In this document: piece after piece, positions 38,906 to 64,000 of the stretch
Layout of the letters: the number at the start of each line of letters is the position of its first letter
How positions within the stretch are numbered: the stretch's first letter is position 1
Virus record (IMG/VR): IMGVR_UViG_3300050120_000152
Span: 124,001 to 188,000 of that record
Reading direction: 5' to 3' (one strand)
DNA length: 64,000 nt
Made by a program: the position numbers and the translations under genes
The notes under the pieces: model-generated
What the model saw: the letters and a program-made list of their open reading frames with translations, nothing else
Database searches by the model: none
What the model was told of the DNA's origin: nothing

Positions 38906-39436
38906 AAACCTTTATTATAGCACAACTTTTTGATTCTGTCAATGCATTTAACAAAATCTTAACATCCTTGTTTACCTTACATTCAGGTTGATGAACATTG
39001 TTAAGAATACGCATAAACCATGCCACATTCCTAATAATGTACCAATCCCTGAAGTTCGTATAGTATGCCATTAACAGATGAACAGCAACTAAATGTTAAC
39101 GAAGAAAGATAAAATATTCAGCAACGGTTCAGGTTGGTTATGATAAAATAGGGATGTGGATGGGAAGCATGGCTCTTATATTTGATTAAAGCAAAACGGG
39201 TTGACACCTGTACAATATTAATGTATTATATCCATACTGAAAAAGGTGTGCCAAAATGCCAGATAGAAAGATTGATCATACTTTTCATGTTGACTATGGT
39301 TGCTTACCTATTCTGGTAGCATTATGGTTATTGTGTGATGGTCACCCATGGTGGGCATTGCTTATATTCTGGATATTCTGATAGGTTGTAATCCATTACA
39401 ATCTCTGTTAGAATAGCATCATACCAAACATAGAGA

Positions 39437-40006
39437 TTGAACATGCTTACCGCAAATCAGTTGGCTATCCAGTGTAAAGTTGCTGAAGTCTTAGCACAAG
39501 CTAAGAAACTATATCCAGCATGTACAGGGCTGGAAATTGATCGTATTGTATGGAAAGAAAAAGGTCGTGCCGTAGGTATGGCATCATTTGATGGTAAGAA
39601 ATTTTTCTTAACCTTTACTAAAGAATCATCGCAGGATGGTATCTTTTTTGATGATACCATGAAGGATACGGTAGCCCATGAAGTGGCTCATCTTGTTGTC
39701 ATGTTTTTCATCGCATGTCGTTTGTATGGTAATCGAAAGATTCAGCCACATGGTAAGGAATGGAGACACATTGCAATCACTCTAGGGTGTAATGGTAAAC
39801 GTTGTCACAATCTGCCTGTTACTGCGGCAAGGGCTCATACAAAATATCTGTATCGCCTTGATAGTGGACTTGAATTGATAATGGGCAAAAAGTATCATAT
39901 GAAAATCATGAATGGTCTGCGAGTATGGACAAAGAAAACCCATGAAGTAATCACATCAGCTCATTATGTGAGTGCTACCAAAAATGGTATAAATCTGGTT
40001 GCATGA
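39437..40006 (+). CDS. SprT-like zinc metalloprotease
   Basis: TVAHEVAHL...PHGKEW..LG...RCH. Confidence 0.88.
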   Translation: MNMLTANQLAIQCKVAEVLAQAKKLYPACTGLEIDRIVWKEKGRAVGMASFDGKKFFLTFTKESSQDGIFFDDTMKDTVAHEVAHLVVMFFIACRLYGNRKIQPHGKEWRHIAITLGCNGKRCHNLPVTAARAHTKYLYRLDSGLELIMGKKYHMKIMNGLRVWTKKTHEVITSAHYVSATKNGINLVA

Positions 40007-40060
40007 TGCAATACATTGTAGTAGAATAGTGTTATTCAAACATCACATAGGAATACGATC

Positions 40061-40480
40061 ATGGGCACTCGTGCAATTGTAGGTATGAAGACTGACAAGG
40101 GTAAGTATACCAGTGTTTACACACATTGGGATGGTAATCCGAATCACCATCTGAGCATTCTCGTCAATTGTTACAATACAGCAAAAAAAGTAAAGACATT
40201 GCTGTCACATGGTGATATTTCGTCATTGAGGATTCATGATGAAGGTGCAGCAGGACATACGTTCAATACTCCTGTAGAAGATCAGACTGTATACTATGGT
40301 CGTGATCGTGGTGATGAGGGTACGAAAGCTAAAAACCATACTTCAATGGCACGATTCACTCAAGAAGAGTATGGTTATCTGTTTCAGGATGGACAGTGGT
40401 TTGTTGTCTTTCCGGGAGAGTTGGTTAATCATTCTGAATTTTTGAAAAATGATGAATATCAGGATGAACGTCAAGATTAA
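40061..40480 (+). CDS. hypothetical phage protein
   Basis: MGTRAIVG..YTHWDG.P..EYGYLF. Confidence 0.75.
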   Translation: MGTRAIVGMKTDKGKYTSVYTHWDGNPNHHLSILVNCYNTAKKVKTLLSHGDISSLRIHDEGAAGHTFNTPVEDQTVYYGRDRGDEGTKAKNHTSMARFTQEEYGYLFQDGQWFVVFPGELVNHSEFLKNDEYQDERQD

Positions 40481-40523
40481 AAAGATTTGACGCCAGCACT
40501 AAATAAAGATATTATATTCATAT

Positions 40524-40608
40524 GGCCTCTTGGCGAAACTGGCATACGCGCTTTCCTTAAGAGTAAGTACCTTCGGGTATGCGGGTTCGACTCCCGCAGA
40601 GGCCACCA
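40524..40608 (+). tRNA. trnL: tRNA-Leu(TAA)
   Basis: GGCCTCT/AGAGGCC, loop CTTAAGA, TACC-TTCG-GGTA arm, A73, CCA. Confidence 0.92.
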
Positions 40609-40609
40609 A

Positions 40610-41080
40610 TTATTTGTTTTTATTTTTACCTCTATATGTCAAAGTTTTTGTATGACAATTTGGACATAATAAAGTTAAATTTTCAAGTTTATTATTAGCA
40701 TGATTACCATCAATATGTTCTAATTCTAATGGTATGGGATCACCAAGCCATTCAGTTAAATTACAATTGTAACATTTATGCTGGAAAATTCCTTCAGATA
40801 TAAGTCGTAGTCTAAGACGATTACTATTTACATATTGAACATTTCCTGACAGAATATCAGTCATAGCTATTACAGGTCTTGGAGGATAAGTTTTTCCTTT
40901 AGCATAACCTTGACCTGTGAAATGTGATATATCAATATCATGTTCCTTAAATCGTTTTTGTATGGTAGAATAGTTGCTTCCGTATGGATTCAATTCAAGT
41001 TTTCGTAATACTTCAGCAATAGAAAAAGAATCTTTGACAGCTTCACGCAATTGTTCTGGGGTATGTTTAAAGTTTGACAT
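40610..41080 (-). CDS. HNH homing endonuclease
   Basis: CYNC..LELEHIDGNHANNKLENLTLLCPNCHTKT; late promoter at 41104. Confidence 0.9.
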   Translation of the reverse strand: MSNFKHTPEQLREAVKDSFSIAEVLRKLELNPYGSNYSTIQKRFKEHDIDISHFTGQGYAKGKTYPPRPVIAMTDILSGNVQYVNSNRLRLRLISEGIFQHKCYNCNLTEWLGDPIPLELEHIDGNHANNKLENLTLLCPNCHTKTLTYRGKNKNK

Positions 41081-41179
41081 AGTAACACTCTCTGTAATAT
41101 ACCTATTTATATGTATTACAAAGTTATGAATAAAAAGATTGACAAGTGATATAAATAACAAATATAATTACTACCTTGT

Positions 41180-41321
41180 GGGCGTATGGGGGAATTGGTA
41201 GACCCGGCAGACTCATTGAAGTCTTCTAGAAATAGAAGATTTTGTAAAATAAATTTAATAGTTTATTTTACAAAATCTGCTTCCGAAAGGAGTCCCGGTT
41301 CAAGTCCGGGTATGCCTACCA
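41180..41321 (+). tRNA. trnL: tRNA-Leu(CAA) split by a 57-nt insert (41215-41271)
   Basis: Removing the insert gives an 85-nt Leu cloverleaf with GCAGA-CTCAAAA-TCTGC. Confidence 0.85.
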
Positions 41322-41371
41322 AACAAATTCATGGTCTTCCCAAACCATGTCTTATGATGTAAGATATACAT

Positions 41372-41449
41372 CGGAGTGTAGCTCAGTCTGGCTAGAGCAT
41401 CGCGTTTGGGACGCGAGGGTCGCAGGTTCGAATCCTGTCTCTCCGACCA
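41372..41449 (+). tRNA. trnP: tRNA-Pro(TGG)
   Basis: TCGCG-TTTGGGA-CGCGA, CCA. Confidence 0.93.
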
Positions 41450-41788
41450 ATTCAAATTAAATGTTGACAATGACGTTTAATAATGTATAATTAGCTACAT
41501 GTAGTGGAACTCGTGACTCTGGTCACGTAAAGGATTGAAGCGAGAGCTTCTAAGGACTTGGAAATAGGGTATCGAATCCCTGCACCCCATGAGGGGGTGT
41601 TCGTCTAAGATAGGACACCAAGATTGCATTAGAAGGTAGCCATTCTGGATGAATGGAGAAAATAACACGAGGCGTCAACTGTACACGCCTACTCGCAAAG
41701 CTAGACATTAGTAAAAATGCACTCGCAAAGTTTTAAAAGTGTTGACAAAGAATAGAAACATGGTATTCTAGTTAACTCAGCAAGACAC

Positions 41789-41863
41789 GGGGAAGTACCT
41801 CAGAGACTAGAGGACTGGCATATGAGCCAGAAGTCGTAGGTTCAATCCCTACCTTCCCCACCA
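41789..41863 (+). ncRNA. tRNA with a 6-nt anticodon loop (AUAUGA)
   Basis: Perfect cloverleaf GGGGAAG/CTTCCCC-A-CCA, but CTGGC-ATATGA-GCCAG. Confidence 0.75.
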
Positions 41864-41866
41864 AAT

Positions 41867-46044: not shown

Positions 46045-46328
46045 GAATGCGAAACCAAGTGGCTCGACGCCACGCGGATATCCGTCCTTGTGGGTAGGTT
46101 TCGAAGTCAATCGTTAAAAGATGCCTTGTGGTCGCTACATGAGGGATTACCGTTACACAATAGCGGTTGAAAGTCGATTAACGATTGGCGGTACTATAAG
46201 GTCAGATGATAGGTCATCTGACAACTATTGAAGTAGTTGCATGGTTCAGTGCCATGTAATGGGATTGCGGCAGAGAACGGTGAATCCCACATTTGTTGCA
46301 CTTGACCCTGCTTGCAGGGTCTTTTTTA
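46045..46328 (+). ncRNA. candidate multi-hairpin RNA ending in a terminator
   Basis: CGAAACC/GGTTTCG, GTCAATCGTTAA/TTAACGATTGGC, GTCAGATGA/TCATCTGAC, GACCCTGC/GCAGGGTC-T6. Confidence 0.5.
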
Positions 46329-47741: not shown

Positions 47742-47790
47742 AACGATAGGAGCGAATGCTACCTGTCCTACCGCAAGCGTTAGGACTTAA

Positions 47791-49098: not shown

Positions 49099-51488
49099 TC
49101 ATGGCTCATAATTTTCGTTATACAGTGCGGCATGAATTTAGCTATGGAGAGGAACAGTATATCTTCGATTCCCCCATTTTGTTGTTAAGGTATTATGATG
49201 ACTTGGAACAGCAATTGGCACTGGCGAAAGTTCTAGGCATCAATTATGAACCAAATCGCGGGGAATACTTGATTATCGAACTGCAACCTAACATTGTGGA
49301 AAAAGTATTGACATTGGATGAAGTCAATACTATTCTTGATGCTGGTCAATAATTTTAACAATCACTAAAACTAAGGAAAAACTATATCATGGCAATCAAA
49401 GCAGTTACTCGTTACCAATCCGAAGATGGAAAGCTTCATGATGATATTGTGGAAGCTCGCTCGTATGATTCCGTTCAACGCGCTTTGACAGGCGTAAAAG
49501 CAGCCATTCTGACCGCATCACCGAATCATATGCTGGGCAATCTCCCGCTTGATCTGGTGAACAATCCGAAGCATGCTGAACTGCTGCGTGATGCTCTGAA
49601 TGCTGTACTGAATAGTCACCGCCACTATGGCAAACTGCGTAAGAATAAGCCTGCGCAGACTGCTACAAAAGTCTGAAATACTGCTTGACAAGCATTAATT
49701 GTTGGAATAAACTTTAAATATCATCATAAAGGCAATCAAATGCACGATTCCACAAATTCTGATTCTATCACCGACTATGCTTCCAATTCGGTAGCAGCTA
49801 CACTTATTTCATCCAAAAATCAAATCCGTCGAATGTATCCCACGGTTTTGCTGGATGAGCATCCTGATGCTATTCTGCCGATCATTTTGGATCGCACCGT
49901 ACATAGCATGATTCATCTGGATCAGAAATTTGATATGAATTCGATTTTCGATCAAGATCATTTCAACAAGATGAAAGCTGAAGCATTTATCCATCTGGCA
50001 TGGCTTAATACGCCGGATAATACGCCATATCCAGAATCATTGAAATACTCCTCCACCAGTGTTTCATCTGATGAAGATGATGAAACCGTTGTAGTAGTTC
50101 CCAAGGTGGCTCCAGCAGCAAAAGTCACAACCGTTGCCGATGTTGCCAAAAATCGCATAATCAGCAAAAATTCAAAGTTCCAAAAAGCATTGCTTATCTA
50201 TACAGAAGATCAGGCCAGCCATGCCAATCGTGCAGCAACATTGCGCCGCATGATTACAGAACTGGAGATGAATCCAAGTACAGCAAATGTGTACTATAGT
50301 AAGTTCAAGAATCCAGTATCACTCCAGAAGTAAAGCTGAAGATAGGCTGAATCAAGTTAAGATTAACTGCACCATCCGAAAATAAGTCTTGCAATTCGTA
50401 ACAAAGCGTGTAGAATGTAAAACACTGGAACGATCCAGTATCACCTAACCCAACACCAACTCACAACAAAGGAAATACGATCATGGCAAAGCGCGAACCT
50501 GCGGTAACTTTCAAGGGCACGATGGCCGAACTGACCAGCAAGCTCACCCTCAACGGCAAGAAGCTCTCCCAGCCGTTTCTCTCCCAGCTTGTCACCTACG
50601 GCTTGTCGGCGTCTGTCGTTGCCAAGCAGCCCAACTCGGTTGGCAAGGGCAAGCCGACCAATATCGTGGAAGTCACCAGCGGCAAGGGTCACATCTTCGC
50701 TGAAATCGTGGCGGATGCGGCGGCTGAGCATGTCGATGCTTCTGCTTCGACCGAAGTGACCGCGTAATACATCTGCTGCAAGAATATCAGAAAGCCCTAG
50801 CCATAGTCTAGGGCTTTCTTTTTGATAAATATATTTCAACGGAGATAGTCTATGTGCCTTGTACGCCTTGATAACCATGTTGAAAGTGTGAACCAGATTA
50901 TTGCAGGGTTGGAAGCGGGAACCCGAACTCTAACCAGTCTGCAAGTCGCTATGCTGCTGCGTGAGCTTGACGAAGCGTTACAGGCATGTCAGGGTAGCCC
51001 TATCCTTACGCATGCGTTAGGACTTAATCCAAGCATGGTAAGCTAACCATAAAGAATATGCATCATTCTGTTACTTTGCTTATTGCAAAGATTTCCTAAA
51101 AGGAATATAATGATTGCACTAGAGGATTCACCATGATTAACCTACTTGTCAAACATGATACTGCCCACAAAGTATGGCACAAGCTCAGTGTAGGCTTTCC
51201 TGACCGTGCTGCATTACCTGATAACATGGAAGGTCTAGCAGGATCATGCTGGCAGTTTGCCATGCAATACGCTATTGACCATCAAATGAACCGTGACCTC
51301 ATTGCATTCCGTATCGTTGACAAGAATGATTCTGTCATCTATGAATACGTTTCAAATGCAACCATGAATGCCGACACTACTGGCATCAAAACCTATCAGC
51401 GTTTCTTAACATCTGTTTAACCTTCCCTTAACAATTCGTAAGGTCACCAGTCCCAACACCATACCATGAAAATCTTTGTTGTCAACAC

Positions 51489-51537
51489 TTGACAATCCAT
51501 TATATATAATGTAAAATAGGGTTGTGGATGGGAAGCA
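51489..51537 (+). promoter_or_regulatory. repeated promoter plus GGA-rich leader (8 copies on both strands)
   Basis: TTGACA-17-TAAAAT-AGGGTTGTGGATGGGAAGCA; copies + 39144, 52510, 61181 (no clear -35); - 54909, 59796, 61970, 63788. Confidence 0.8.
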
Positions 51538-51633
51538 ATCCACTCCATGATGAAAAAGAAATTTGAAAATAATGCTTGACGCTATCCCTGTAATCGCTTA
51601 TAATACTTCCACACCAACCAACGGAGCAAAACA

Positions 51634-52362
51634 ATGCTTGTCAAGATCACAAACAATGGCGAATCCTTCCTTTGCAGCCCGCGTCAGGCTGGCGTGCTGG
51701 AATTGCTGCTTGATAGTAATGCAGGTGGGTTTGCATCGGTCAAGGGCTATGTATCCAGTGAAACGGGCGAAGTGGCAGATTATACCTTCATCAGCCGTTT
51801 CAGCGTAGGCAACATGTATGAGCGTGCTATGGCAGCTCTGGAAACCTTCACAGTGGCTGATATTATCGACAGCATTCGTGACAATCTGAAAGTCAAGGCT
51901 CTGACCACGGATGAACTTTACGAAGCGTTCGATGCTCGCCGTGCGGCTGAAATTGCCAGCAAGGTGCAAACCCTTGAAGGTGACCGCAGTGATGCACGTC
52001 GCCAGTCGCATGATCGTAATTATCATGTGTTGGATCATGGCGTGAAGGTTCATTACGTCACGGAAAAGGTTGACAAGCTGACTTATCCAGTGCTGGAATC
52101 CTATGGCAATGAACGTCTGCCAGTGGTCAAAAGCATCATGTTGAACATTTTGGAAGTGAAAAAGACCGTGACCACGGCAGGCACGTACAAAACCGTGAAC
52201 AGTGGTGTTCCTGTCATCATCGGCAATGCTTTGAACAAGCTGCTGCCGAAAACGGCCAAAATGAAAGTGTTGTCGTTCAAGGATGACAATTTCGATTCTC
52301 TGGCTCTGGCTGGCGTCCAGTACATCCCCGAAGATTTCAAGGGCTTGTATAGCGCAAGCTGA
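51634..52362 (+). CDS. hypothetical protein
   Basis: 242 aa; own promoter and GGAG RBS. Confidence 0.75.
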   Translation: MLVKITNNGESFLCSPRQAGVLELLLDSNAGGFASVKGYVSSETGEVADYTFISRFSVGNMYERAMAALETFTVADIIDSIRDNLKVKALTTDELYEAFDARRAAEIASKVQTLEGDRSDARRQSHDRNYHVLDHGVKVHYVTEKVDKLTYPVLESYGNERLPVVKSIMLNILEVKKTVTTAGTYKTVNSGVPVIIGNALNKLLPKTAKMKVLSFKDDNFDSLALAGVQYIPEDFKGLYSAS

Positions 52363-53361
52363 ACCTGAAAAATAATCCCCATAGGCTAACACTTATGGGG
52401 ATTTTTCTGCTATTGGGAACATGTACCTGCGATGAAATTCCGTTCAAGCCTTATCTAATCAATGGGCAGGGAAACCTGCCCATTCAGCTTACGTTCATAA
52501 TGCATATGGTAAAATAGGGTCGTGGATGGGAAGCATTGCCACGATAAAGTATGTCATGAGATACCTTAAAATGATGCTTGACAATGATTCTAATAATGAT
52601 ACTTTTCTTTATAAGAAAAGACTTGTAATGGATAATTCATTACAGTATGATACTGGCATATCCTACTGGAATATCACGATGAACAGTTCGCATGCTACCA
52701 TCAAGATTCGCATTGGCAACAATGTAATGTTGGATTATAATCCTACCTTCTGCCGTTGGTATCATAGCGACGATGGCTTGACATGGTGGGCATTGCCGAT
52801 CAAGATCAAGCGTGTTGAAACGGCTATTGCATACGTAGCGAATCATTATTATATACTGGCCGAAAACCTGTACAAGTAATGCTTGACAGCCTGCCATAGT
52901 TCTATTAGAATACTTGCATCAACCAAGGGAACGTCAGCATGAACATCAACCATCGCGACAATACCATCATCATCATTTTCGCCCTGCTGGTGCTGGCTGG
53001 CATCTATTTTGAAACCTATCGCTGGTTCAATTGATACTGCTTGACTTTCATGCGAGCTATGTTACAATACTCCCATCATGAAACCCAACGTCGAGATTGA
53101 CTGAATATGTTAATATCAATCGAATCATTTGATATGGTTTCCGCGTTGTATACCGTGAACATTTTCGGTAATCTTTATTATCTTGGGTTTGCCAAGTATG
53201 ACGAGAATGATGTAGAGATTTATGATTATGCCGCTATAAAGTATCAGCCTGATATTAGCAGGGCTATTAGTAGTCAAGCTGAAAACCTTCATGAACAATT
53301 GGATCAAAACAAAAAAGAAATATTGCTTGACTGTTGAACCGATCATCGTTATAATACTCCC

Positions 53362-53484
53362 ATGAAAACGAAAATCAACAATCCGGTAGCGAAGCATTCT
53401 GGCAAATTCAACAAGCCTGCGGTTCATCGTGATCGCAAGAATGATTATCGTCGCCGCGAAAAACATTCAAATAGGGTTGCATAA
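53362..53484 (+). CDS. small basic protein NPVAKH..FNK..VH.DRK..Y.R..KH (40 aa)
   Basis: Not in the ORF track; own promoter; stop overlaps next start. Confidence 0.65.
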   Translation: MKTKINNPVAKHSGKFNKPAVHRDRKNDYRRREKHSNRVA

Positions 53485-56400
53485 TGATTCATAATTCCCG
53501 CAAGTTGCTCAAGAATGAATTACTGAAAAACTATATCAGCATGGTTTCCTATGATCGCGGCCATAGTGCTGGTGAACAGGAAGTAGAAAGTATTGCTAAT
53601 GAAATGGCATATGATCTGCAAAAGGTCGATGATTATATCACAGGTCTGGAACAGCAGTGCTTTCGGTTTCATTGTGCTGGCTGATAATACGGTGAAGAAA
53701 GCTCGAATTTAGCCTTGACAGCTATGGTTTCAAAGAGTAATCTGTAATCTGTTTCGTGAAGTATGATTGTTAAGGATTGGATTAAAAGAGCTACAGAACA
53801 GCCTGCGGGTGTAGCCAACCAATTATGGGCATGAATAGGAATACGGCTATGTAACACTGTCACCCTTGCTATGGGAAGCATTTACTTATAGACTGATAAA
53901 ATTAGAATGCGGTACGTCTGGGCTGTAATCAGACGAAAATCCTCCCGCCAGCTAGGATAAGCCCTTAGCTGGCTCAATTTCAGGAACGCCATCATGATCA
54001 ATCGTCACGAGCAGCAAGGTTATACCATTCTGGAACTGGGCTGGCTGCTTTATGCGGCTTGCTGGATCGTCGGCATCATCGGATGGATTGCCAACATCGT
54101 GGCTTTGTGCCATATGACAATGCCTGTTGACCTCGGTCATGCCAGCATTCTGTTCATTTTGCGCATCATCGGCATTCCAGTCGCACCATTGGGTGCAGTG
54201 TTGGGATTGTTTTTCTAAAAATCCCTTGCAATATGATGCCATTCTGATATAATACCCTTATCAACCACGATAGGGGATTATCATGCGCTACACTCTTCAC
54301 GATGCAAACGGTAACAAGCTGGGTGAATCTGAGACTGCGCAAGGCATCGGCAATATTGCCACACATGGCACGTTTTCATTTGATTCAAATCCGAACCGTT
54401 TTTATCCGTTCACAGTCTATGAACAGGAAAATGGTCATATTGTTGGTCACAATTATGAGTGTGAAACTCATATGACAGAAGCATTGCGTAAGCTAAAATA
54501 AAGCTTGCACTACCAGACAATTCTGTTATAATACTCTCACACCAAATGAAACGGAGTAAAATCATGGCAACTGCAACTCCCACTCCCACCACTGTCCGTC
54601 CACTGTTCACCATCGCTGCGGAGATTCGCAAGGATTGGGGCGCAAAGGTCAGTCCACATGCAAAGCCTTATTTGGATGCTATGGATTCTCTGAACAGAAT
54701 CGGAGACAACTATTATTGTGATACTGGTGTAAGTGTTGTCCTATATTTTCTCGGCAATGCGCAAGGTTGGAGGGGAGAATCTGCCAAGCGTATCAAGGCC
54801 GAACTCAGGGCAATGGCTGACATCAAGTAACAATTTCAGAAAGGTTGTCTCTTGGAACAGGCGTAAAAGCCAGCCGACAAGGTGGCTTTTCCTTTTTGGA
54901 TATTACTGTGCTTCCCATCCACAACCCTATTTTACATTACATATAATGGATTGTCAATAGATATTTTATAAAATAATTGGTGTAATTTACTAAAATATGG
55001 TACTTTGCTATTGCAAAGATGGGCTAAAGCTATTATAATACTTTCATCCCATCGGAGATAGTCATGGCTAAGCGTGTCGATTCCGTTACGATCAATGGCA
55101 AGGTTCATACCAAGGCCAGCATTCGTGCCATGCTTGAGTGCAACGATCAGTGGCTATATCGTGCCATTGTGGCTATCAATGCTTCACAGACTGCCAATGA
55201 GCTTGCTCATGGTGGAACCATCGAAGATAATGGTATTGGCTTCAATGGGGCAGACGGATACATTCTTATGAGCTTTGCGGCACAGTTGAATCGTTGCGGC
55301 CATCTTTCACCAAAGCAGACTATCATTGCTAGAAAAAAGATGGTAAAGTATGCATCACAGTTACTTACCATTGCCCGCGAAAAGGAATCGAAAATCCAAT
55401 GAAACAGCTAGTACTAAATACAGATCAAGGTGTTTTTACTTTTCATACGCATAATAGTGGTGCTTGCACGTTGCATGTCTATCCTGCACTTCAAGCAGAT
55501 GGCGATGATAATGGATTCAGGGCAGCTATGGATGGCGTTGAAAGTTTGTTACTTGCCATGTATTCCGCTGGCATCAATCTGAATACGCCTGAAATAGCTG
55601 AAGCAATCGACACGGCAATTTCCGCCATCGAAAATAATTACTGAAATGGTTGACAGCGCAATTCTATTGCATTAGAATAATCATACAGCAATCAAACAGG
55701 ATTCATTGTGAATACTCTCCCGTCTCTGAAAGCTTTTCAACTTGCCATGATATTCAACCGTTTTGTTATTGACGGTGACACTTATCCGACTGATGCCGAG
55801 TATATCAATGACGAGGATGGTGAACGCATCGTGGTCAGCAATGATTCCGATGAACTGACCTTTATCAAGATCGTTTCCAAGGATGACAGCAATGTATTTG
55901 TGGTCAGCAATGGTTCCGATGACTATACCGTTCAGTTTTTGAGTAGTCAGGCAATCAATCCATTTTCGGAGTAAGTTATGCCATCGTCCAATGTTGCTAT
56001 TTTCATTCTGCTTTCCACCATCCTTTTCGGCGGTTTGTTCCTTGTATGGCAAAAAAGTGATTGGCTGAATTTCGTCATCAAGGCTGGACTTTTCGGCATG
56101 ATGGTGTATGGTATCGTCATTTTGATTACCAAGTAATATGAAACTGTTATTTTGTAATGTCTGTCACGATGTTGTCAAATTGACTTTTGATGGCAGATAT
56201 TGTGCATGTAAAAAATCATGGGGGAAATATCTCCCTGATGGATTATACGCTCAAATCAGTGGAGAAGCTATTCCCATAGGGTTTGCCAATAATACGTTAC
56301 TGGAAGCCTTGTGCAAGCGTCCACAAGCTGGTGATGGATCACGGTTCACGGCCTTTGTCATTCCTCATGTTTGCCCTACTATCGAAACGGTTGAACATAA

Positions 56401-56772
56401 AAACTAAAATAATAGTTGACACCCTGAAACATTCTGTTATAATTACCTCACACCAACCAACAAGGGCAACATCATGAGCAAGTTCGCAGCTTCCATCGTC
56501 AAGGGTACTGGTTTCGTGCTGAATCGTGATGAAGGTCAGCCGTTCTATACGATTTCCAAGACTGGCGCACTGGAAGGAAAGCAGTCGCCGAACATGGGTT
56601 TCGTGTACAAGAATGCCGAGACTGGCGAGTATTCCGTTCATCTGGGTCTGAAGCGTACCGTGGTCGCGGATTTCAACGCTGTCAAAGGTTTCGTCAAGGA
56701 ATCGCTGGCCGCGTAACGCTTGACAGCGTTGCGAGCATTGTATTAGAATGCTCGCAACAAAGAGTTTTGATT

Positions 56773-56890
56773 GGGTTTGTACGCAGATGGCATAGCGGCT
56801 GTACAGTAAGGCCAGTGTGGCAACATTGTTGCCGATTATTATCGAGTTGATCGGTTCTAATCTTCGTGGGTTCGAATCCCTCCCTGCCCA
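56773..56890 (+). ncRNA. expanded tRNA-like RNA (Tyr-like, loop CAGUAAG)
   Basis: D arm CGC/GCG, 50-nt variable region with hairpins, T arm GTGGG-TTCGAAT-CCCTC; weak acceptor stem. Confidence 0.55.
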
Positions 56891-57147
56891 TTCAAAATGC
56901 TTGACATGCACCATTCAAGTTGTATAATAATCACATGGAAAACGAAACCAAACTTGTGATGTGCGATGTGGGCAGCTGCCGTAATGAGTTGCCAATCGAA
57001 CAGATGAACAGTGAATCCAGCAATGGTGAAACATGGTATGCTTGCCCTGATTGTGTGGACAAGGTTCAGAACAGGTCTGGTTATTGTTCGCTCCAATGTC
57101 AATACACGGGATTCTGTGACGATAGTTGCTGAAGTAATGAGTTAATA

Positions 57148-57345
57148 ATGGCGAGTTCTCTGGTGCGAAACCTGTACCAACTAGCCTAGCTGTAGGGCCA
57201 TGCAGGGAATGACTGATCGGGTATGGTAACCCGAACATAGGATAAATGTTAAATAGAAACGGCAGAGTCTTGGGGATTCTGATACGCCTATTGAAGCATC
57301 CTTTAAAAGCATTGATCCCAACATACAGTCAGAGAATTCGACCAT
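57148..57345 (+). ncRNA. candidate structured RNA
   Basis: 11-bp closing stem CGAGTTCTCTG/CAGAGAATTCG; GACTG/CAGTC; TCGGGT/ACCCGA. Confidence 0.5.
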
Positions 57346-57510
57346 TATTAACTTGACAATACTGTTTCATGTTGTATAATGTATTACAACCCCAGAAACT
57401 TTCGGTGGATAATGGGGCAATAAACCGGGCTACTAAGCTGAGTGGTAATTGATAGATCAGGATAAACCTTGCCCTTTGGGCCTGACCGTTGGTTACGAAA
57501 CCGAATATTC

Positions 57511-57657
57511 ACATAGTGAAGCATTCTTAAACGATACTTACACCTATACAAAACAGAACTGTAGGCGACAAGGATAAGCGTTTCCTATCACACGTATGGG
57601 ATTAGAATGTTAGGATAGCGCCTAGCACGTTTGGTAAGCTAGAATGCTTCACTATGT
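57511..57657 (+). ncRNA. candidate RNA closed by a perfect 17-bp inverted repeat
   Basis: ACATAGTGAAGCATTCT / AGAATGCTTCACTATGT. Confidence 0.55.
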
Positions 57658-57703
57658 AAATAATGATTGACAGTACCGTTCCAAGCTGTATAATGTAATT
57701 CAT

Positions 57704-57809
57704 GGGTCGGTAGCTCAGTTGGTAGAGCAGGAGACTTATTCAAGTATCTTCAATGAGGATACTTCTATTAATCTCTTGGTCGCGGGTTCGAACCCCGCCC
57801 GACCCACCA
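57704..57809 (+). tRNA. trnK: tRNA-Lys(TTT) split by a 30-nt insert (57738-57767)
   Basis: Body resembles enterobacterial tRNA-Lys; removing the insert gives 76 nt with loop CTTTTAA. Confidence 0.88.
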
Positions 57810-57901
57810 TTTCAACCGGCTACAATGTACCTCTGCTGCAAGATACCTCTGCGTAAGCAAGTATGGCGCTTAATTTGCAAGTGTGGCGTGCTGGTCTCTA
57901 T

Positions 57902-58183
57902 TCCATCAACAATGAGGTTACCATGAAAAAGCTGCTGATCTTCACCATCGTCGCATTTGCTACACTGACCACGCTGGTAGGCTGTACCGATGCGGAAAAG
58001 GCATCGTGGGGTGCGCTGGGTGATGCTGGGCATATCGTCTGCTACTCTGGCGGCAAGGTGATTTATGAGGGTGATTCTACGGGCAAGATCGCCACGGTGG
58101 ATCATTCCGATGGCTGGGAGTTCAAGGATGCAAACTCGGGCAAGTTTGTCCGCGTATCCGGTCAATGTCTCATCACGAACTGA
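57902..58183 (+). CDS. lipoprotein
   Basis: MKKLLIF..TTLVGC lipobox; GAGG RBS. Confidence 0.75.
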   Translation, partial: SINNEVTMKKLLIFTIVAFATLTTLVGCTDAEKASWGALGDAGHIVCYSGGKVIYEGDSTGKIATVDHSDGWEFKDANSGKFVRVSGQCLITN

Positions 58184-58676
58184 CAAGGTTTCATCCCTGA
58201 TACAACAACCGGGAATGTAAGGATACTATAATTTTCGGAATATGTCAAGATGCTCATACCATCCGCTGACGTAAGTTATCAGGACTTTTTGTGATATACC
58301 CTTGTGAAGCCGTGGTGTACTGGTTTAGGGTATATTGCAAAAAGGTGTTGACAAGCTGCAATGGTGTTGTATAATACAATTACACAATCGAGAGCTTTAG
58401 CGGTAACAGAATCGACTGTGGGGATGTGCACGGAGCGGCAACGTGTTCACGTTGTGATGTGATAAGGATATAGGACAGTAGGATAACAGAATAAACCCTG
58501 ATTGATTCGCGAGTCAACATGAATAAACCTGTTAGAGTATTGTTACAATCTGAATCATATTGTGGGTTCGAATCCCACCATCCTCCTCGCTAAAGGTAGC
58601 CATTCTGATGAATGGAGAAAATAACACGAGGCACATATGCGCGCCTACTCGATTAACCATCATTTGGCAAAAAGAG

Positions 58677-58967
58677 TTGACAGCCTGCTGACGTTCCATT
58701 ATAATACTTGCATCAACCAAGAGAACGCCATTAATGTCTGATGAATCATTCCCCATTGGCACTCGCGTACAAACTGTTAAGTATGGTGCTGGAACTGTAG
58801 TTGACGAGGAAGTATGTCACGACATTTTTGGTGGTGTTCCTAGAGCAATTTCTACTGGTAGGCGTGGTGTTATGTTGGATAACCCTACCATATTGAGTCC
58901 TAGTCCAGCATATTTTTGGCAAAACGAGTTGACAGTCTGCTGACGTTCCATTATAATACTCCCATCA
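58677..58967 (+). promoter_or_regulatory. duplicated sigma70 early promoters flanking one gene (type example of many cassette promoters at 48-64 kb)
   Basis: TTGACAG(C/T)CTGCTGACGTTCCATTATAATACT at 58677 and 58929. Confidence 0.85.
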
Positions 58968-59967
58968 TCACAAAGGGATAAGATCATGGCTCGCATTTAT
59001 CATCCTGAAGTAGCTCGCGGTGGCAATAGCTATGCGCAAGTTGCGGCACCGAACGATGCTCGCTATATGGGTCTGTATCACTGGTGCGGATATTGGGCAC
59101 AGTGGGATAAGATCATCGGGGTGGATGGTATGTGGTGGATCGTGCAAGGTGTGGATGTAAATGGTGAGCCATTGGCTGGCTCAGATGGTCGAGTGCGCAA
59201 GCATTGCACCAGCATGGAAGCAAGCCATTTTGCTGATAAACCGTTTCAGGTTCGCAGTCGATATGGCAAGGATTCAATGCTTGACAGCTGATACAATTCT
59301 GTTATAATACTCCCATCATCAAGGGAAACGCCAATATGTCCGAACAGCAAGCCAATATCTGCACCGCCTTCAACATCATGGTACGGTATGCATTCCCTGA
59401 TTCTATGGTATATGCTCGCGTTGCCAACATTCTTGGCGAAACCATCGTCATCACATTCACTCAAAAAACCCAGTATTCAAACAACATCGCCGAAAATGAT
59501 CCCGCATTCATGAAGTTCCTTGTTCATGTTGGCAAAGATGGCTCCGCTGAAATTAACGCACCTGCCATGCATAGCAATGCTACCAAGGATGCAGGCGTAA
59601 AATTTCGCAAGATCAAAGCAGCCAGTGAAGGCGATGCTATGCAAAAGCTTGCACACTGGTTCATCAAAAACCATGATGGTATCATGGCCGCAAAGAATAA
59701 ATGGTAAAACGTCCATCGGGTGGAGTGAGTAGGTATTAACGGGTTATGCCGAATGTCGATCTTGCTTCACCTTTTTGTTGCGTAGGGTATTGTTCTCCAT
59801 CCGCCATACTATTTTACATTACATATAATACAATTGTCAACAAGTATTTCCGAAAAATGGTGAAATATATTGGTTGACGGCTAAGGTACAAAGGCGTAAT
59901 ATACACACATCGGCTAGGCAACCTAGCGATTAGAAAATCTTTCTTCCAAGCCAAAGAGGGTAATATC

Positions 59968-60804
59968 ATGAGTGGTCGTCTTGCAACCCGTATGCGCTCT
60001 TTTTCCACCATCCGCAGTAATGACAACAATCCACTGACCGTCGATCAGATGATGCGCGTAGCACCGTCTATTTTCGCAGTCGTGCCACATCATACGCGCA
60101 GCGAACGCTATGCCTATATTCCGACCAGTCAAGTACTGGCAGCATTGCAGCATGAAGGATTTCAGCCCTTCTCGGTTTCGCAGTCGCGTACCCGTATCGC
60201 AGATCGCCATGACTATACCCGTCATTTGATTCGTCTGCGTCATGTGAATGATATTTCCAATCCCGAAGCTGCGCACGAAATTGCAGTGTTGAATAGCCAT
60301 GATGGCACGTCATCCTATCAGATTCTTGGCGGCATGTTTCGCTATGTCTGCGCGAACGGTCTGGTCTGTGGAGACATTGAAAAGGATATTCGTATCCGTC
60401 ACAAAGGTAACATCATGGATGATGTTGTCGAGGGTGTTTACAGTGTTATGGAACGTCAAAAGGACGTGACTGCGCTTGTTGACAGCATGCGCAGCTTGAC
60501 ACTGGGTGTGGAGGAACGTATGATTCTGGCTGAAGGTGCGCTTGCCTTGCGGTTTGGTGAAGATGCCAGCCCGATCACTACGGCACAGGTATTGCAAGCT
60601 CGCCGCAATGAAGATGCTGGCAATAGCTTGTGGCAGGTGTTCAATCGGGTTCAGGAAAACGTGATTCAGGGTGGTATGGACGGTCGCGGCAAGACTGGCA
60701 AGATTCGTAAGGTTCGTGAAATCACGGGCATGGATCAGGATACGAAATTGAATCGCGCACTCTGGACGCTTACTGCAAAAATGGCTGAACTCAAGGCCGC
60801 ATGA
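59968..60804 (+). CDS. DUF932/DUF945 family phage/plasmid protein
   Basis: APSIFA..HTRSERYAYIPT..EGFQPF, NSHDGTSSYQ..RYVCANGL. Confidence 0.88.
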   Translation: MSGRLATRMRSFSTIRSNDNNPLTVDQMMRVAPSIFAVVPHHTRSERYAYIPTSQVLAALQHEGFQPFSVSQSRTRIADRHDYTRHLIRLRHVNDISNPEAAHEIAVLNSHDGTSSYQILGGMFRYVCANGLVCGDIEKDIRIRHKGNIMDDVVEGVYSVMERQKDVTALVDSMRSLTLGVEERMILAEGALALRFGEDASPITTAQVLQARRNEDAGNSLWQVFNRVQENVIQGGMDGRGKTGKIRKVREITGMDQDTKLNRALWTLTAKMAELKAA

Positions 60805-61456
60805 TTCATCAAGAAAAGCCCTTTTCAGGGCTTTTCTTTTGTATTATACTTTGTTATAATAGCACTATCATTCTTGTACAGGGTTGCCATGAACTTCGCT
60901 CCGCTCAGTCCTATCAATGAATCTAATACGCCAGCGTATAACATTCTGGTGCATTGTGTTGAATGCAGGCGATCAGTTACATATGCAACGGCTGTATTCA
61001 ATGATTGGAAAATCGACATTGATGGTATCCCATTCACTGCGATATACTGTCCGGTATGCTTTCACAAGCTCACGGCTGGAAAAGAATGAAGATGGAAACC
61101 TACCAGACGATCAAGAAAGTCAAGCATAATCAATAGGGAGCTATAGGCTCCCATTCAGCTTACGTTCATAATGGATATGATAAAATAGGGTCGTGGATGG
61201 GGAACCAACCCTGCTAAGTATCGTAAAAATACTGCTTGCAATTCTGATTCACTGTGATAGAATAGAATCTCTGAACAGGATTACTACCATGCCTCCTCAT
61301 AATGAACATCATTATTCATGGTCACCAGTTATTTTTCACTCAAAACATCGCAAAGCTCGTATCTATCGTGCTAAGCATAAAGTGCGTCGATGAATTCTTG
61401 ACAAGCAGATAAGTTCTGTTATAATACTCCCACACCAACCGAAACGGAGAATTCCC

Positions 61457-61897
61457 ATGCTGTACTTTCTGATCAATGATGGTAAAATCCTGATCAATCA
61501 TGGCAAAGTGGTTGACGTGAAGGACGTTCACCAGACTGACAATGCATACCAGTCTCGTTGGGATTGGAATTCGTTTGCAGAAGTGCAGGCCATCGCAGAC
61601 AGCGCCAATGCGTTGAACAATGGCAATCACTATCTGGCGGTCGATGGTGGTGAATGGCTATCCCCGCGCTTTGATGTTACCATTGCTCCAAAGATTGGTG
61701 CCAAAGTATCATACGGCTTCAATGGCGACTATTACCCTGATGGCACCATCGTCAGCATGAGCGAGTCATTCAAGCGAGTTGTGACCTCTACTGGCAACGT
61801 GTACTATCGTCGCAAGCTGAGCGCATCATGGAAGCGTACAGGCGGAACATGGTCAATGGTACAGGGTCATATTGACGAACGTAATCCCAGCTTCTAA
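61457..61897 (+). CDS. hypothetical phage protein
   Basis: Own promoter, GGAG RBS and terminator. Confidence 0.7.
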   Translation: MLYFLINDGKILINHGKVVDVKDVHQTDNAYQSRWDWNSFAEVQAIADSANALNNGNHYLAVDGGEWLSPRFDVTIAPKIGAKVSYGFNGDYYPDGTIVSMSESFKRVVTSTGNVYYRRKLSASWKRTGGTWSMVQGHIDERNPSF

Positions 61898-62834
61898 CAC
61901 AATAAATCCCAGACTGGCAACGGTCTGGGATTTTCTTTTGCATCATCAATAAAAATTTAACAGTATTATCCCATCCTGCCATACTATTTTACATTACATA
62001 TAATGGATTGTCAACTACTATATTTTAAGAATACTCCTTGCAAAGATTGCCCAAAAGGAATATAATGCATTACCAAAGAGGAAAATCGTCATGATTACCA
62101 TTCGTCGGTTGCATATTTTTGCATTCATTCTGGGATTTGTGCAGATGTGGCATTTTGGTGATGCAGTGGGTTGTCCTACTGCTGATGATAAAATCTGGAA
62201 TGATGCATACGAAAATGGTGCTGACATAGCACAACGCTTGCACCATTGATTCAATTCTGTTATAATACACGCATCAAAAGGAGATTCATCATGCCGAATT
62301 TTGTAATCCAACATGAATTTGACTTTGAACCGACATATATTGTCAATAAAGATGATGAAGATCAATACATCAAACTCGATGTGAATATTCCGTGGAAAAA
62401 TCGGTTGACTGCTGCGGAAAAGATTGCCAAAATTCTTAATGAATTGGAGTAATAATCATGGTCATTCAACTTGCCGAGTATTGTGACAAACGTGCTGAAC
62501 TGACGTTTGAAATCCTTGCAAACTCTGCTAACGGCATGTTGGAACCGCAGCGTAGCAGACTGGTGCGTATTCTCAAGCATTGTCAAAAGGTCAAACGGTT
62601 TCAGCGTAAACTGACAAAAGTTGCTTGACAATCTGAAATATTGTAGGATATAAATCAACCAAGGAACATTAGCATGGACAACATTCTTCCCGAAATCAAG
62701 TATCGTGGATTGTCCTATACGCTGGACAAAGTTGAAAATGGTGTAGTATACTGGACTTGTCTCTATTCACGCCATACGGATCAATGTTCGGTGGATACGT
62801 GGAAGTCTGGCTCCCCCTATGAGGAACGCACCTG

Positions 62835-63110
62835 ATGAAGCCAAAGACCCTGATTTTCATGCTGCTGATGCTATGCATGGGCATAGCTCATGCGGCACAA
62901 TCACACGCATCCTTTTCCATATCGGTTATGGTTGTGGACGCATGTGATACGCATGTATCGAATAGTGGCAAGATTGTTGCGCAGTGTTCGGGAAAGAATA
63001 CCGCAGCGCAGCAGGTTATCACGGTCACACCACCAACACCTGAACAGCTGGCGATGTATGGTGTAAGCTATACATCACAGAATGTGAAAGTCGTTACAAT
63101 AACCTACTAA
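62835..63110 (+). CDS. secreted mini pilin-like protein (Csu/SCPU-like termini)
   Basis: Signal peptide; ASFSISVMVVDAC; C-terminal VVTITY. Confidence 0.5.
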   Translation: MKPKTLIFMLLMLCMGIAHAAQSHASFSISVMVVDACDTHVSNSGKIVAQCSGKNTAAQQVITVTPPTPEQLAMYGVSYTSQNVKVVTITY

Positions 63111-63447
63111 AAAGCTTGCTACTAGCATGTGACAATGTTATAATAATCCCATCATTCAAGGGAAACCCCATCATGTCGAAAGCATACCGTTTTGAAGTGA
63201 TCCCCCATATGGTTTGGAAACATGCCCTTACTGGTGCACAGGCTTCTATCTATGGTGCGTCTCCGCAGGGTGATGATTGGTCTATTGTGGAAGATGGTTT
63301 TACCTTCCGTGACAATCGTTACAATACGGTGGGCAGCTATGGTGTTCGTGATCGGCGCACTGTCGAGGAAATCGAAGGATACCTTACCACGCAATATGGT
63401 TTCGATTGGCGCTTGCAGCATGCACAGTGATAGGGTATAATAATACC

Positions 63448-63663
63448 ATGAAAACACTCATTGCCATTCTGCTCTATCTAGTTCTCTTTGCTGTCATGGC
63501 TCAGAGTGGTATGATTACCTTCACTGGTAGAATTTTGGCAAGCAATGGCCCTAGCATCACGACACAATCTGTCGTAACATCCTCAAATATTCCGCTGGTG
63601 AGTTATGCACTGAGTCGTGTACAAGGTAGCTCAGTCCTCATCAAAACCATTACATATCAGTAA
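63448..63663 (+). CDS. secreted mini fimbrial-subunit-like protein
   Basis: Signal peptide; SGMITFTGRI; C-terminal KTITYQ. Confidence 0.5.
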   Translation: MKTLIAILLYLVLFAVMAQSGMITFTGRILASNGPSITTQSVVTSSNIPLVSYALSRVQGSSVLIKTITYQ

Positions 63664-64000
63664 AGCTAAAGTCTTGTGCGAGCCTACCTCTTAAAGGATA
63701 GGACAAAGGTGAATTAACACCTGACGGCTACTCAATGCCGTGCTATCTCCAAAGGGTAGCAGCCTGAATTAACAGGTCGCCATCCATTGCTTCCCATCCA
63801 CATCCCTATTTTACATTACATATAATACAATTGTCAATAGATATTATAATAAAATAGTTCTTGCATTACGGTACATACTTGTTTATAATGGCTCATCATT
63901 TAATCATGGACACCAGCATGACTCGCAATGAATTACATAAGCTGCTCATCAAATTGCGCACTATGGTTAAGGCTGGTAACTATCCTTCTAACTATAGGAC

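What the first reader, a model, noticed from the sequence alone, without database searches (positions are those of the whole stretch)
39144..63837. Eight dispersed promoters driving GGA-rich short RNAs: candidate CsrA/RsmA sponges
Seen: TTGACA-17-TAAAAT (the -35 is clear in five copies) followed by a conserved AGGG(T/A)(T/C)GTGGATGGGAAGCA, or the variants ATGGCAGGATGGGA and ATGGCGGATGGAG. Four copies face against the early genes. Those at 54909 and 61970 run 60-90 nt into a bidirectional terminator without a credible ORF. At 51518 GTGGA/TCCAC puts GGA in a loop. Known: CsrA/RsmA bind ANGGA, and the CsrB repeat is CAGGAUG (present at 61970). Alternative: the leader is complementary to the TCCCATC found after many early promoters, allowing antisense control.
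Basis: partly seen in the sequence, partly recalled or inferred. Interest (0 to 1): 0.66.

Follow-up and report, generated by a model that had tools for sequence, protein, structure and literature searches.

The report
Phage promoters launching 5'-tagged short RNAs
An uncultured 340-kb peat phage carries nine copies of a promoter fused to a 12-base transcribed 'tag' (G-N-GGAUGG-RRRR) that is kept letter for letter in related giant phages while everything around it has diverged, so it is a real regulatory module, some copies of which are predicted to make short non-coding RNAs, but nothing here shows that it soaks up CsrA.

Summary
There are eight copies in the window and a ninth 4.7 kb beyond it. 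Each is TAAAAT-AG-N4 followed by G-N-GGATGG-RRRR, far above chance.

The window lies in a 340,344-bp phage genome from peat. The same module occurs 11 times in a syntenic 350-kb phage, 3 times in a third phage, and once in a groundwater contig that shares nothing else with this genome. At three orthologous sites the -10 and tag are kept while the RNA body is at random identity (24%).

The upstream half is interchangeable: a TTGACA -35, a double GTTCAG box, or TTTGCA plus TGn.

Copies that face against the neighbouring genes run 55-85 nt into a bidirectional terminator with no credible ORF. Copies that face with the genes sit about 55 nt (36 at one copy) upstream of the gene's own sigma-70 promoter.

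No transcript data exist; only DNA runs hold this phage.

The CsrA-sponge reading is not supported. There is one conserved GGA-bearing site per RNA, no A-N-GGA context, no repeated GGA hairpins and no Rfam hit, and the host is unknown.

The antisense alternative (TCCCATC) failed three tests.

Best reading: a module that fixes an exact RNA 5' end bearing a recognition tag for an unidentified factor. The main rival is a DNA-level promoter or operator element.

The parts
39117..39169 (+). Copy 1, box-type. GTTCAG-type double box at 39117-39132, TGa-TAAAAT -10 at 39144-39149, predicted start G at 39156, tag at 39156-39169. The gene's own TTGACA/TATTAT promoter follows at 39201-39229.
   Evidence: orthologous copy in G001 at 42510(+)
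51489..51537 (+). Copy 2, consensus -35 type. TTGACA at 51489-51494, TAAAAT at 51512-51517, tag at 51524-51537. GUGGAU/AUCCAC hairpin. The next promoter (TTGACG-17-TATAAT) is at 51576-51604, ahead of the gene at 51634-52362.
52483..52535 (+). Copy 3, box-type, just after the terminator hairpin at 52464-52481. Double box at 52483-52498, TGg-TAAAAT at 52510-52515, tag at 52522-52535. A TTGACA promoter follows at 52577-52605. The ORF from ATG 52526 is probably not the true start; the in-frame ATG at 52628 lies after that promoter.
   Evidence: orthologous copy in G001 at 56347(+)
54858..54957 (-). Copy 4, consensus -35 type, facing against the genes. TTGACA at 54957-54952, TAAAAT at 54934-54929, start G at 54922, tag at 54922-54909, bidirectional terminator at about 54887-54865. 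Predicted RNA of about 60-65 nt with no credible ORF.
   Evidence: orthologous short RNA in G001 at 59350(-)
59791..59840 (-). Copy 5, variant tag GCGGATGGAGAACA. TTGACA at 59840-59835, TAAAAT at 59816-59811, start G at 59804. No clear terminator. It runs antisense into the 3' end of the plus-strand gene at 59336-59707.
61154..61206 (+). Copy 6, box-type, after the hairpin at 61136-61152. Double box at 61154-61169, TGa-TAAAAT at 61181-61186, tag GTGGATGGGGAACC at 61193-61206. A TTGCAA/TAGAAT promoter follows.
61896..62014 (-). Copy 7, variant tag with a 1-nt insertion (GCAGGATGGGATAA). TTGACA at 62014-62009, TAAAAT at 61991-61986, start G at 61979, strong bidirectional terminator at 61933-61904. 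Predicted RNA of about 80 nt.
   Evidence: fold z = -2.5
63662..63837 (-). Copy 8, consensus -35 type. TTGACA at 63837-63832, TAAAAT at 63813-63808, tag at 63801-63788, with a second ATGGATGG directly after it. The following 140 nt or so are non-coding and fold moderately well.
   Evidence: fold z = -2.1
38851..38888 (-). GTTCAG double box, plus an inverted GTTCAG/CTGAAC pair, inside the leader of the minus-strand GNAT gene (38501-38812). This is the only other place in the genome where the box pair occurs next to a promoter.

Best explanation
This is a conserved phage transcription module. It consists of a sigma-70-type -10 (TAAAAT), a fixed AG-N4 discriminator, and a 12-nt initial transcribed tag. 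The module would make host RNA polymerase start at one defined G, so that every transcript begins pppG-N-GGAUGG-RRRR.

The upstream activating part is interchangeable. It can be a consensus -35, a double GTTCAG box for an unknown activator, or TTTGCA with an extended -10. The module can therefore fire under different regimes.

Where the module points against its neighbours, it yields a 55-85-nt non-coding RNA that is little more than the tag plus a shared bidirectional terminator. Where it points with them, it puts the tag at the head of a longer leader in front of the gene's own promoter.

I infer that the tag works in the RNA, as a single-stranded purine-rich recognition signal at an exact 5' end. 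The factor that reads it is unidentified and could be a host or phage protein that is titrated, recruited or blocked.

Shown: the module, its copy number, its conservation, its modular upstream part and its terminators. Inferred: the transcription start, that RNAs are made at all, and that the tag acts at the RNA level.
For: - Copy counts are far above chance.
- In 24 copies from four phage genomes, TAAAAT (one copy TAAGAT), AG, the start G and GGAT(G)G are invariant or nearly so. Four purines follow, and information content then falls to zero.
- The distance from the -10 to GGATGG is 8 nt in 23 of 24 copies.
- The groundwater contigs L007 and L008 share only a 42-nt stretch (the module) with this genome.
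- G000 and G001 are syntenic, with proteins 27-74% identical. At three orthologous sites the -10 plus discriminator is 31/36 identical. The tag is 29/42 identical, with its core at 100%. The RNA body is 44/186 identical, which is random.
- At one orthologous site the upstream part has switched from box-type to TTGACA-type while the tag stayed. That fits a product whose 5' end matters rather than a particular activator.
- The predicted start is an invariant G with a pyrimidine or G before it, at the canonical 7th position after the -10.
- Against-facing copies in both phages end in terminators 30-60 nt downstream.
- ORFs from the tag's ATG are unconserved.
Against: - There is no RNA evidence. 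Only DNA runs from peat hold this phage.
- TAAAAT-AG is invariant, whereas other promoters nearby use TATAAT, TAGAAT or TACAAT. That could mean the unit is read as DNA.
- No RNA-binding protein candidate was found. The phages lack CsrA; Hfq and ProQ were not searched.
- The tag is often predicted to be partly paired.
- Forward-facing copies have no obvious need for a decoy RNA.
Confidence: 0.42

Rival explanations
1. DNA-level element. The conserved -12 to +12 block is read as DNA. It could be a downstream promoter region that sets open-complex stability and promoter clearance, as in the strong T5 promoters. It could instead be an operator for a phage repressor or switch protein sitting over +1 to +12. 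On this reading the RNA product is incidental.
For: - The -10 and the two bases after it are as invariant as the tag.
- G at -5 and a GGG discriminator fit the known sigma region 1.2 preference, and a purine-rich initial transcribed region favours escape. Both points are established knowledge, not tested here.
- The neighbouring early promoters carry the opposite, C-rich discriminator ACTCCC. That suggests two kinetic classes.
- The module occurs in either orientation next to gene promoters.
- In the TTGACA-type copies an opposite-strand TATAAT overlaps the spacer, so binding there would be mutually exclusive.
Against: - Positions +3 to +8 lie in the downstream duplex of the open complex, where RNA polymerase is not known to read sequence. 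Invariant GGATGG therefore still needs a separate factor.
- No DNA-binding candidate was identified.
- Promoter-plus-terminator units with no other content look like RNA genes.
Confidence: 0.27
2. CsrA/RsmA sponge or decoy. The GGA-bearing tags on abundant transcripts titrate the host's CsrA-family regulator during infection.
For: - GGAUG, the core of the SELEX CsrA site, is invariant. A second GGA (GGGA or GGAG) follows in most copies.
- One copy reads CAGGAUG.
- In copy 2 the GGGA lies in a loop.
- There are nine strong promoters.
Against: - There are one or two adjacent sites per RNA, not a series of GGA hairpins.
- The context is G-N-GGA, not A-N-GGA.
- The loop placement is weak statistically.
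- No CsrB/RsmX/Y/Z-type Rfam match was found.
- The strict invariance of U6, G7 and G8, and of the exact 5' position, exceeds what CsrA sites show.
- The host, and hence the presence of CsrA, is unknown. The phages encode none.
Confidence: 0.1
3. Base-pairing small RNAs with a shared 5' seed, in the manner of OmrA/OmrB. The purine-rich seed would pair with pyrimidine-rich targets: phage early leaders (TCCCATC) or host mRNAs.
For: - The architecture is a conserved 5' end, a variable middle and a terminator.
- There is a 7-nt complement to three early-promoter leaders.
Against: - Duplex energies with 39 candidate promoter-proximal leader sequences are not better than with shuffled seeds (P=0.22).
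- TCCC probably lies upstream of the early transcription start.
- G001 keeps the tag but its leaders lack CCCATC.
- Complements of 8 nt or more elsewhere in the genome lie scattered inside coding regions, mostly antisense and not at translation starts.
- Host targets cannot be tested.
Confidence: 0.08
4. Attenuator. The tag is the anti-terminator strand that competes for the 5' half of the terminator just downstream. Read-through into the antisense of the convergent gene would then be switched by whatever binds the tag.
For: - In 4 of about 10 short RNAs, the tag and the 3' half of its own terminator share a 6-8-mer. The null rate is 1.3% per pair.
- The only GGATCG tag sits next to a GATCGG terminator.
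- In one G001 RNA the minimum-energy fold pairs the tag with the terminator's 5' half.
Against: - Tag-to-downstream duplex energies are not better than with shuffled downstream sequence in 21 of 23 copies; the two exceptions are the trivially complementary face-to-face pair. Overall t-test P=0.18.
- ATGGGGATT-type stems are common in this phage's terminators generally.
- Forward-facing copies have no terminator.
Confidence: 0.05

Closest known systems
CsrB/RsmZ-type CsrA sponges
   Same: Non-coding RNAs with GGA motifs, made from their own promoters and ended by an intrinsic terminator.
   Different: Sponges carry many GGA hairpins in RNAs of 100-370 nt. Here there is one 5'-terminal GGAUGG site in an RNA of 55-85 nt. 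There is no Rfam match and no A-N-GGA context.
OmrA/OmrB-like multicopy small RNAs with a conserved 5' end
   Same: Several paralogous short RNAs share an identical 5' end, have divergent bodies and end in intrinsic terminators.
   Different: The seed here is purine-rich. No target complementarity beyond chance was found. The same tag also heads forward-facing leaders.
Downstream sequence region of strong phage T5 promoters (Kammerer, Gentz and Bujard, recalled from memory)
   Same: Sigma-70 phage promoters whose first 20 or so transcribed bases are conserved and purine-rich.
   Different: The T5 homology is loose and tied to promoter clearance. Here six bases are invariant across divergent genomes, and the -10 is fixed as well.
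T4 middle promoters (MotA box) and lambda cII-dependent promoters (TTGC-N6-TTGC)
   Same: The box-type copies replace the -35 with a pair of direct repeats (GTTCAG, about 11-nt period) at fixed distance from a good -10. This is how activator-dependent phage promoters are built.
   Different: The box sequence is different, and no activator was identified. The transcribed tag has no counterpart in T4 or lambda.
Lambda oop RNA
   Same: A short terminated RNA made convergently against the 3' end of a neighbouring gene.
   Different: oop is a single copy and overlaps its target. These RNAs mostly stop at the shared terminator and come as a family.
RNA anti-CRISPRs (Racr, solitary repeat units; PMC10651486) and viral crRNA-like RNAs (bioRxiv 10.1101/2024.10.29.618823)
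   Same: Short phage RNAs immediately downstream of a promoter. The tag resembles the last 11-12 nt of type I-C-style repeats, which form the crRNA 5' handle: TGGATTGAAAC in X. citri and CGGATGGAAAG in a Holophagae MAG.
   Different: Known Racrs mimic the whole repeat including its hairpin. Here only the handle-like part is present. No exact repeat match, host link or spacer hit was found.
PeSL promoter cassettes of T4-type phages (Arbiol et al. 2010, recalled from memory)
   Same: Repeated early-promoter cassettes sit between small genes of a plastic early region. The TTGACA-type copies are near-identical over about 50 nt and break assembly graphs.
   Different: There is no conserved stem-loop. 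Three copies sit at orthologous sites in a phage with 27-74% protein identity, so the module is old and selected, not merely mobile.

Membership tests
CsrA/RsmA sponge RNA (CsrB, RsmX/Y/Z) | Many (at least 4-5) GGA motifs per RNA | tested here: not met
   The predicted short RNAs carry 2-3 GGA triplets. Only the 5'-terminal one is conserved.
CsrA/RsmA sponge RNA (CsrB, RsmX/Y/Z) | GGA presented in hairpin loops, in an A-N-GGA context | tested here: inconclusive
   A closing stem of at least 3 bp around the tag occurs in 9 of 24 copies against 4.9 expected (P=0.03). The context is G-N-GGA in all copies.
CsrA/RsmA sponge RNA (CsrB, RsmX/Y/Z) | Match to a curated family model | tested here: not met
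   No such Rfam hit at gathering score or at E up to 1.
CsrA/RsmA sponge RNA (CsrB, RsmX/Y/Z) | A CsrA-family protein is present and binds the RNA | not testable with these tools
   The host is unknown. None of the three phage genomes encodes CsrA.
Sigma-70 promoter | A -35 and a -10 at 16-18 nt, or an extended -10 | tested here: met
   Five copies have TTGACA-17/18-TAAAAT. The other copies in the window have TGn-TAAAAT plus an upstream box. Activity itself was not tested.
Stand-alone small RNA gene | Promoter, no conserved ORF, and an intrinsic terminator within about 100 nt | tested here: met
   Met for 54934(-) and 61991(-) in the window and for at least 5 copies in G001. Not met for the four forward-facing copies.
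Stand-alone small RNA gene | Transcript detected | not testable with these tools
   Only DNA runs hold the phage.
Antisense regulator of the early leaders (TCCCATC) | Complementarity beyond chance, conserved in relatives | tested here: not met
   P=0.22 against shuffled seeds. G001 leaders lack the complement.
RNA anti-CRISPR (Racr / solitary repeat unit) | Similarity to a whole CRISPR repeat, including its hairpin | tested here: not met
   Only the last 11-12 nt of I-C-style repeats are resembled. The RNA starts 1 nt before that part.
RNA anti-CRISPR (Racr / solitary repeat unit) | The host carries a matching CRISPR-Cas type | tested here: inconclusive
   One Holophagae MAG has a 38-repeat array ending in CGGATGGAAAG and has Cas5d genes. 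None of its spacers hits the phage. Only 1 of 401 Acidobacteriota sampled has such repeats.
PeSL-type mobile promoter cassette | Early promoter plus a conserved stem-loop, repeated between ORFs | tested here: not met
   The promoter is repeated, but no conserved stem-loop follows it.

The most novel reading that the evidence does not exclude
The tag is a mimic of a crRNA 5' handle. Transcription would start 1 nt before an 11-nt sequence that resembles the 3' end of type I-C-style CRISPR repeats, so each RNA is born with a ready-made handle and needs no Cas processing. Such RNAs would nucleate or hijack the host's Cascade proteins, acting as a handle-only RNA anti-CRISPR or as a self-promoted guide. 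That would account for the fixed -10-to-tag distance, the exact 5' end, the multicopy layout and the irrelevant RNA body.
Probability: 0.07. Interest if true: 0.85.

Novelty: new variant of a known kind. Interest (0 to 1): 0.58.

Why it matters
Giant phages of soil and peat are known almost only from sequence, and how they time their early genes is unknown. This work defines a 24-nt module that is kept across four such genomes and combined with three different upstream activation schemes. It gives a concrete handle on their transcription programme, and it defines a small-RNA family that is absent from Rfam. If the tag is read in the RNA, it would be a case of a phage marking transcripts at their very first bases. 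If it is read in the DNA, it would be a sigma-70 promoter class with sequence-specific information at +3 to +8, which is unusual. Either outcome can be tested with cloned cassettes, without culturing the phage.

Tried and rejected
- Rfam, at gathering score and at E up to 1: only tRNAs and noise.
- INPHARED phages: no nucleotide match to the region or to a 63-nt copy.
- IMG/VR with the exact 26-nt pattern: nothing. A relaxed pattern gave extra hits that are chance matches inside coding sequence.
- Relatives of the neighbouring 242-aa protein in IMG/VR: none by the close search.
- Phage-encoded CsrA, sigma-70 region 2, OmpR-type winged helix, Cas5d, Cas7, T7-type RNA polymerase and NusG: not found in any of the three genomes. 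The T7-polymerase control rang nowhere, so that blank is weak.
- A small peptide starting at the tag's ATG: lengths of 2 to more than 60 codons, no conservation, and one copy lacks the ATG.
- A 5' hairpin enclosing the tag: weak.
- Tag pairing with downstream RNA: not beyond shuffles.
- Tag pairing with early leaders: not beyond shuffles.
- Extended complements elsewhere in the genome: scattered in coding regions.
- GGATG as an avoided restriction site: frequency is normal.
- CRISPR arrays in the phage: none.
- Spacers of GGATGG-ending arrays against the phages: no hits.
- Sequencing runs: three peat DNA runs and no RNA. Contigs merely break at the repeated cassettes.

Full report
**What is there.** The window is bases 124,001-188,000 of a 340,344-bp virus record with terminal repeats. 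It occurs in three peat metagenome DNA runs, and no RNA run holds it. It has no nucleotide relative among isolated phages. Its only protein kin there are distant ones in jumbo Xanthomonas and Stenotrophomonas phages.

Window positions from about 42 to 68 kb are a run of small plus-strand genes. Most have their own consensus promoter of the form aTGCTTGACA-N17-TATAAT-ACTCCCA..., followed by a CA-rich leader.

- GTGGATGGGAAGCA occurs five times exactly. TTGACA-N16-18-TAAAAT occurs five times against 0.17 expected. The joint 26-nt string occurs five times against 0 expected.
- Looser patterns add 59816(-), 61181(+) and 61991(-); the last has a 1-nt insertion.
- A ninth copy lies just past the window at genome 192,691(-).
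- All nine lie within 30 kb.
- The common unit is TAAAAT, AG, four variable bases, then G-N-GGATGG and four purines.
- Upstream there are two forms in this genome. Five copies have TTGACA at 17-18 nt and a near-identical spacer. Four copies have no -35 but have TGn before the -10 and a pair of GTTCAG-like direct repeats with an 11-nt period.

**It is conserved elsewhere, and only it.**
- A metagenome scan found two groundwater contigs, variants of one phage. By BLAST they share only a 42-nt stretch (the module) with this genome. They show the same layout: terminator, module, about 55 nt, TTGACA promoter, gene.
- IMG/VR holds a complete 350-kb phage (G001) with 11 copies, again within 30 kb. 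It also holds a 175-kb fragment (G002) with 3 copies, two of them face to face.
- A relaxed pattern found nothing further that is real.
- Over 24 copies, TAAAAT (one copy TAAGAT), AG, the G at the seventh position after the -10, and GGAT(G)G are invariant or nearly so. Four purines follow, and information content then falls to zero.
- G000 and G001 are syntenic here, with proteins 27-74% identical. Three copies sit at orthologous intergenic sites. At those sites the -10 and discriminator are 31/36 identical. The tag is 29/42 identical, with its core at 100%. The next 62 nt are 24% identical, which is random.
- At one of these sites the upstream half is box-type in G001 and TTGACA-type in G000.
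- Two G001 copies have a third upstream form, TTTGCA plus TGn.
- The module from -12 to +12 is therefore under selection, and its activating half is interchangeable.

**What the copies would make.** The invariant G sits where sigma-70 holoenzyme normally starts, with a pyrimidine or G before it. The RNAs should therefore begin pppG-N-GGAUGG-RRRR. This start is inferred, not shown.
- Copies that face against their neighbours reach an intrinsic, mostly bidirectional terminator 30-60 nt on. This holds for 54934(-) and 61991(-) in the window and for at least five copies in G001. The RNAs are 55-85 nt, little more than tag plus terminator.
- 63813(-) is followed by about 140 nt of non-coding, moderately structured sequence (z = -2.1).
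- 59816(-) has no clear terminator and runs antisense into a gene.
- Forward-facing copies (39144, 51512, 52510, 61181 and those in G001 and L008) have no terminator. They mostly sit about 55 nt upstream of the -35 of the gene's own promoter (36 nt at 61181).
- ORFs from the tag's ATG have 2 to more than 60 codons and are unrelated. One copy reads GGATCG and has no ATG.
- The 117-codon ORF at 52526 contains the next promoter in its first 80 nt. It has an in-frame ATG at 52628, after that promoter, so the tag ATG is unlikely to be its start.

For the CsrA sponge, the shared core GGAUG is real. Against it:
- There is one conserved site per RNA rather than a series of GGA hairpins.
- The context is G-N-GGA, not A-N-GGA.
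- Loop placement is only weakly above chance (9 of 24 against 4.9 expected, P=0.03).
- Rfam gives nothing.
- The strict 5' position is not something CsrA needs.
- The host is unknown, so presence of CsrA cannot be assessed.

For the antisense alternative:
- Exact TCCCATC follows only three early promoters.
- The likely start of those promoters (A at position 7) leaves TCCC untranscribed.
- Duplex energies with 39 candidate promoter-proximal leader sequences do not beat shuffled seeds (P=0.22).
- G001 keeps the tag while its leaders read ACCTCCACACC.
- Longer complements elsewhere are scattered inside coding regions.

**Other mechanisms tested.**
- Tag-to-downstream pairing is not beyond shuffles, apart from the trivially complementary face-to-face pair. 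A general 5' stem or anti-terminator is therefore not supported.
- One oddity remains. In 4 of about 10 short RNAs, the tag and the 3' half of its own terminator share a 6-8-mer, against a null rate of 1.3% per pair. This includes the single GGATCG tag beside a GATCGG terminator.
- The phages encode no detectable CsrA, sigma-70 region 2, OmpR-type regulator, T7-type polymerase, NusG, Cas5d or Cas7.

**A lead, not a finding.** The tag resembles the last 11-12 nt of type I-C-style CRISPR repeats, the part that becomes the crRNA 5' handle.
- The X. citri repeat ends GCGCG-TGGATTGAAAC (PMC9504256).
- A Holophagae MAG has a true 38-repeat array whose repeat ends in the stem followed by CGGATGGAAAG. 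That genome has Cas5d genes.
- The predicted transcription start would lie 1 nt before such a handle.
- Phage RNAs that mimic repeats are known: Racr (PMC10651486) and crRNA-like RNAs (bioRxiv 10.1101/2024.10.29.618823).
- However, the search that found these arrays was built around GGATGG-RRRR, so much of the match is forced.
- No repeat ends with the tag exactly, and no spacer hits the phages.
- Only 1 of 401 Acidobacteriota sampled has such repeats.
- Known Racrs mimic the whole repeat, not just the handle.
- I give this reading about 7%.

**Verdict.** This is a real, conserved, previously undescribed promoter-plus-tag module of a small clade of uncultured jumbo phages. It probably produces a family of short non-coding RNAs as well as tagged leaders.
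- I favour a tag read in the RNA at an exact 5' end by an unidentified factor (0.42).
- The main rival is a DNA-level promoter or operator element (0.27).
- The CsrA sponge (0.10), a pairing seed (0.08) and an attenuator (0.05) are possible but disfavoured.

Noticed in passing
window 28451-28540 (-): A 90-nt tRNA with anticodon CTA, which reads the amber stop codon. ARAGORN calls it tRNA-Pyl and it scores 66 bits with the Rfam tRNA model. A suppressor tRNA in a jumbo phage may point to stop-codon recoding of part of the genome.
   Followed up: no
window 50000-62000 against the rest: The small-gene region that holds most copies has 42-46% G+C, against 30-38% in the first 38 kb of the window. 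It is a compositionally distinct block.
   Followed up: no
window 51604, 53068, 53355, 58957, 59308, 61425 and others (+): There is a second promoter family: aTGCTTGACA-N16/17-TATAAT followed by the C-rich discriminator ACTCCC and a G-poor, CA-rich leader up to an AAGGGA/ACGGAG ribosome site. The related phage G001 has the same style (ACCTCCACACC). The discriminator is the opposite of the AGGG of the tag promoters.
   Followed up: partly
window 38851-38888 (-), leader of the GNAT gene at 38501-38812: The GTTCAG double box, plus an inverted GTTCAG/CTGAAC pair, lies downstream of a consensus promoter. This may be an operator for the same unknown box-binding protein. In G001 a box pair also drives a TATAAT promoter without the tag (near G001 52,975).
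   Followed up: partly
L011/L013 (G002 173,962-174,045): Two tag promoters face each other 84 nt apart, so their transcripts would be fully complementary.
   Followed up: no
window 54918-54947 (+), 63797-63826 (+), 51528-51499 (-): In the TTGACA-type cassettes the opposite strand carries a perfect TATAAT inside the spacer. The complement of the tag start (TCCACA) serves as a weak -35 at 18 nt. These copies may be overlapping back-to-back promoters.
   Followed up: no
window 38426-38445, 38482-38501 and 47772 region; genome 56,652: A 20-25-nt element (core CTTACGCAAGCGTTAGGACT) is repeated at four sites in the genome, twice in tandem just downstream of the GNAT gene.
   Followed up: no
genome ends (outside the window): The terminal repeats of the record are runs of about 40 TAA units. 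The 'direct terminal repeat' call may therefore rest on a simple repeat.
   Followed up: no
window 57704-57806, 40524-41863 (+): tRNA genes in this region each have their own consensus sigma-70 promoter a few bases upstream. Several are unusually long (up to about 95-103 nt).
   Followed up: no
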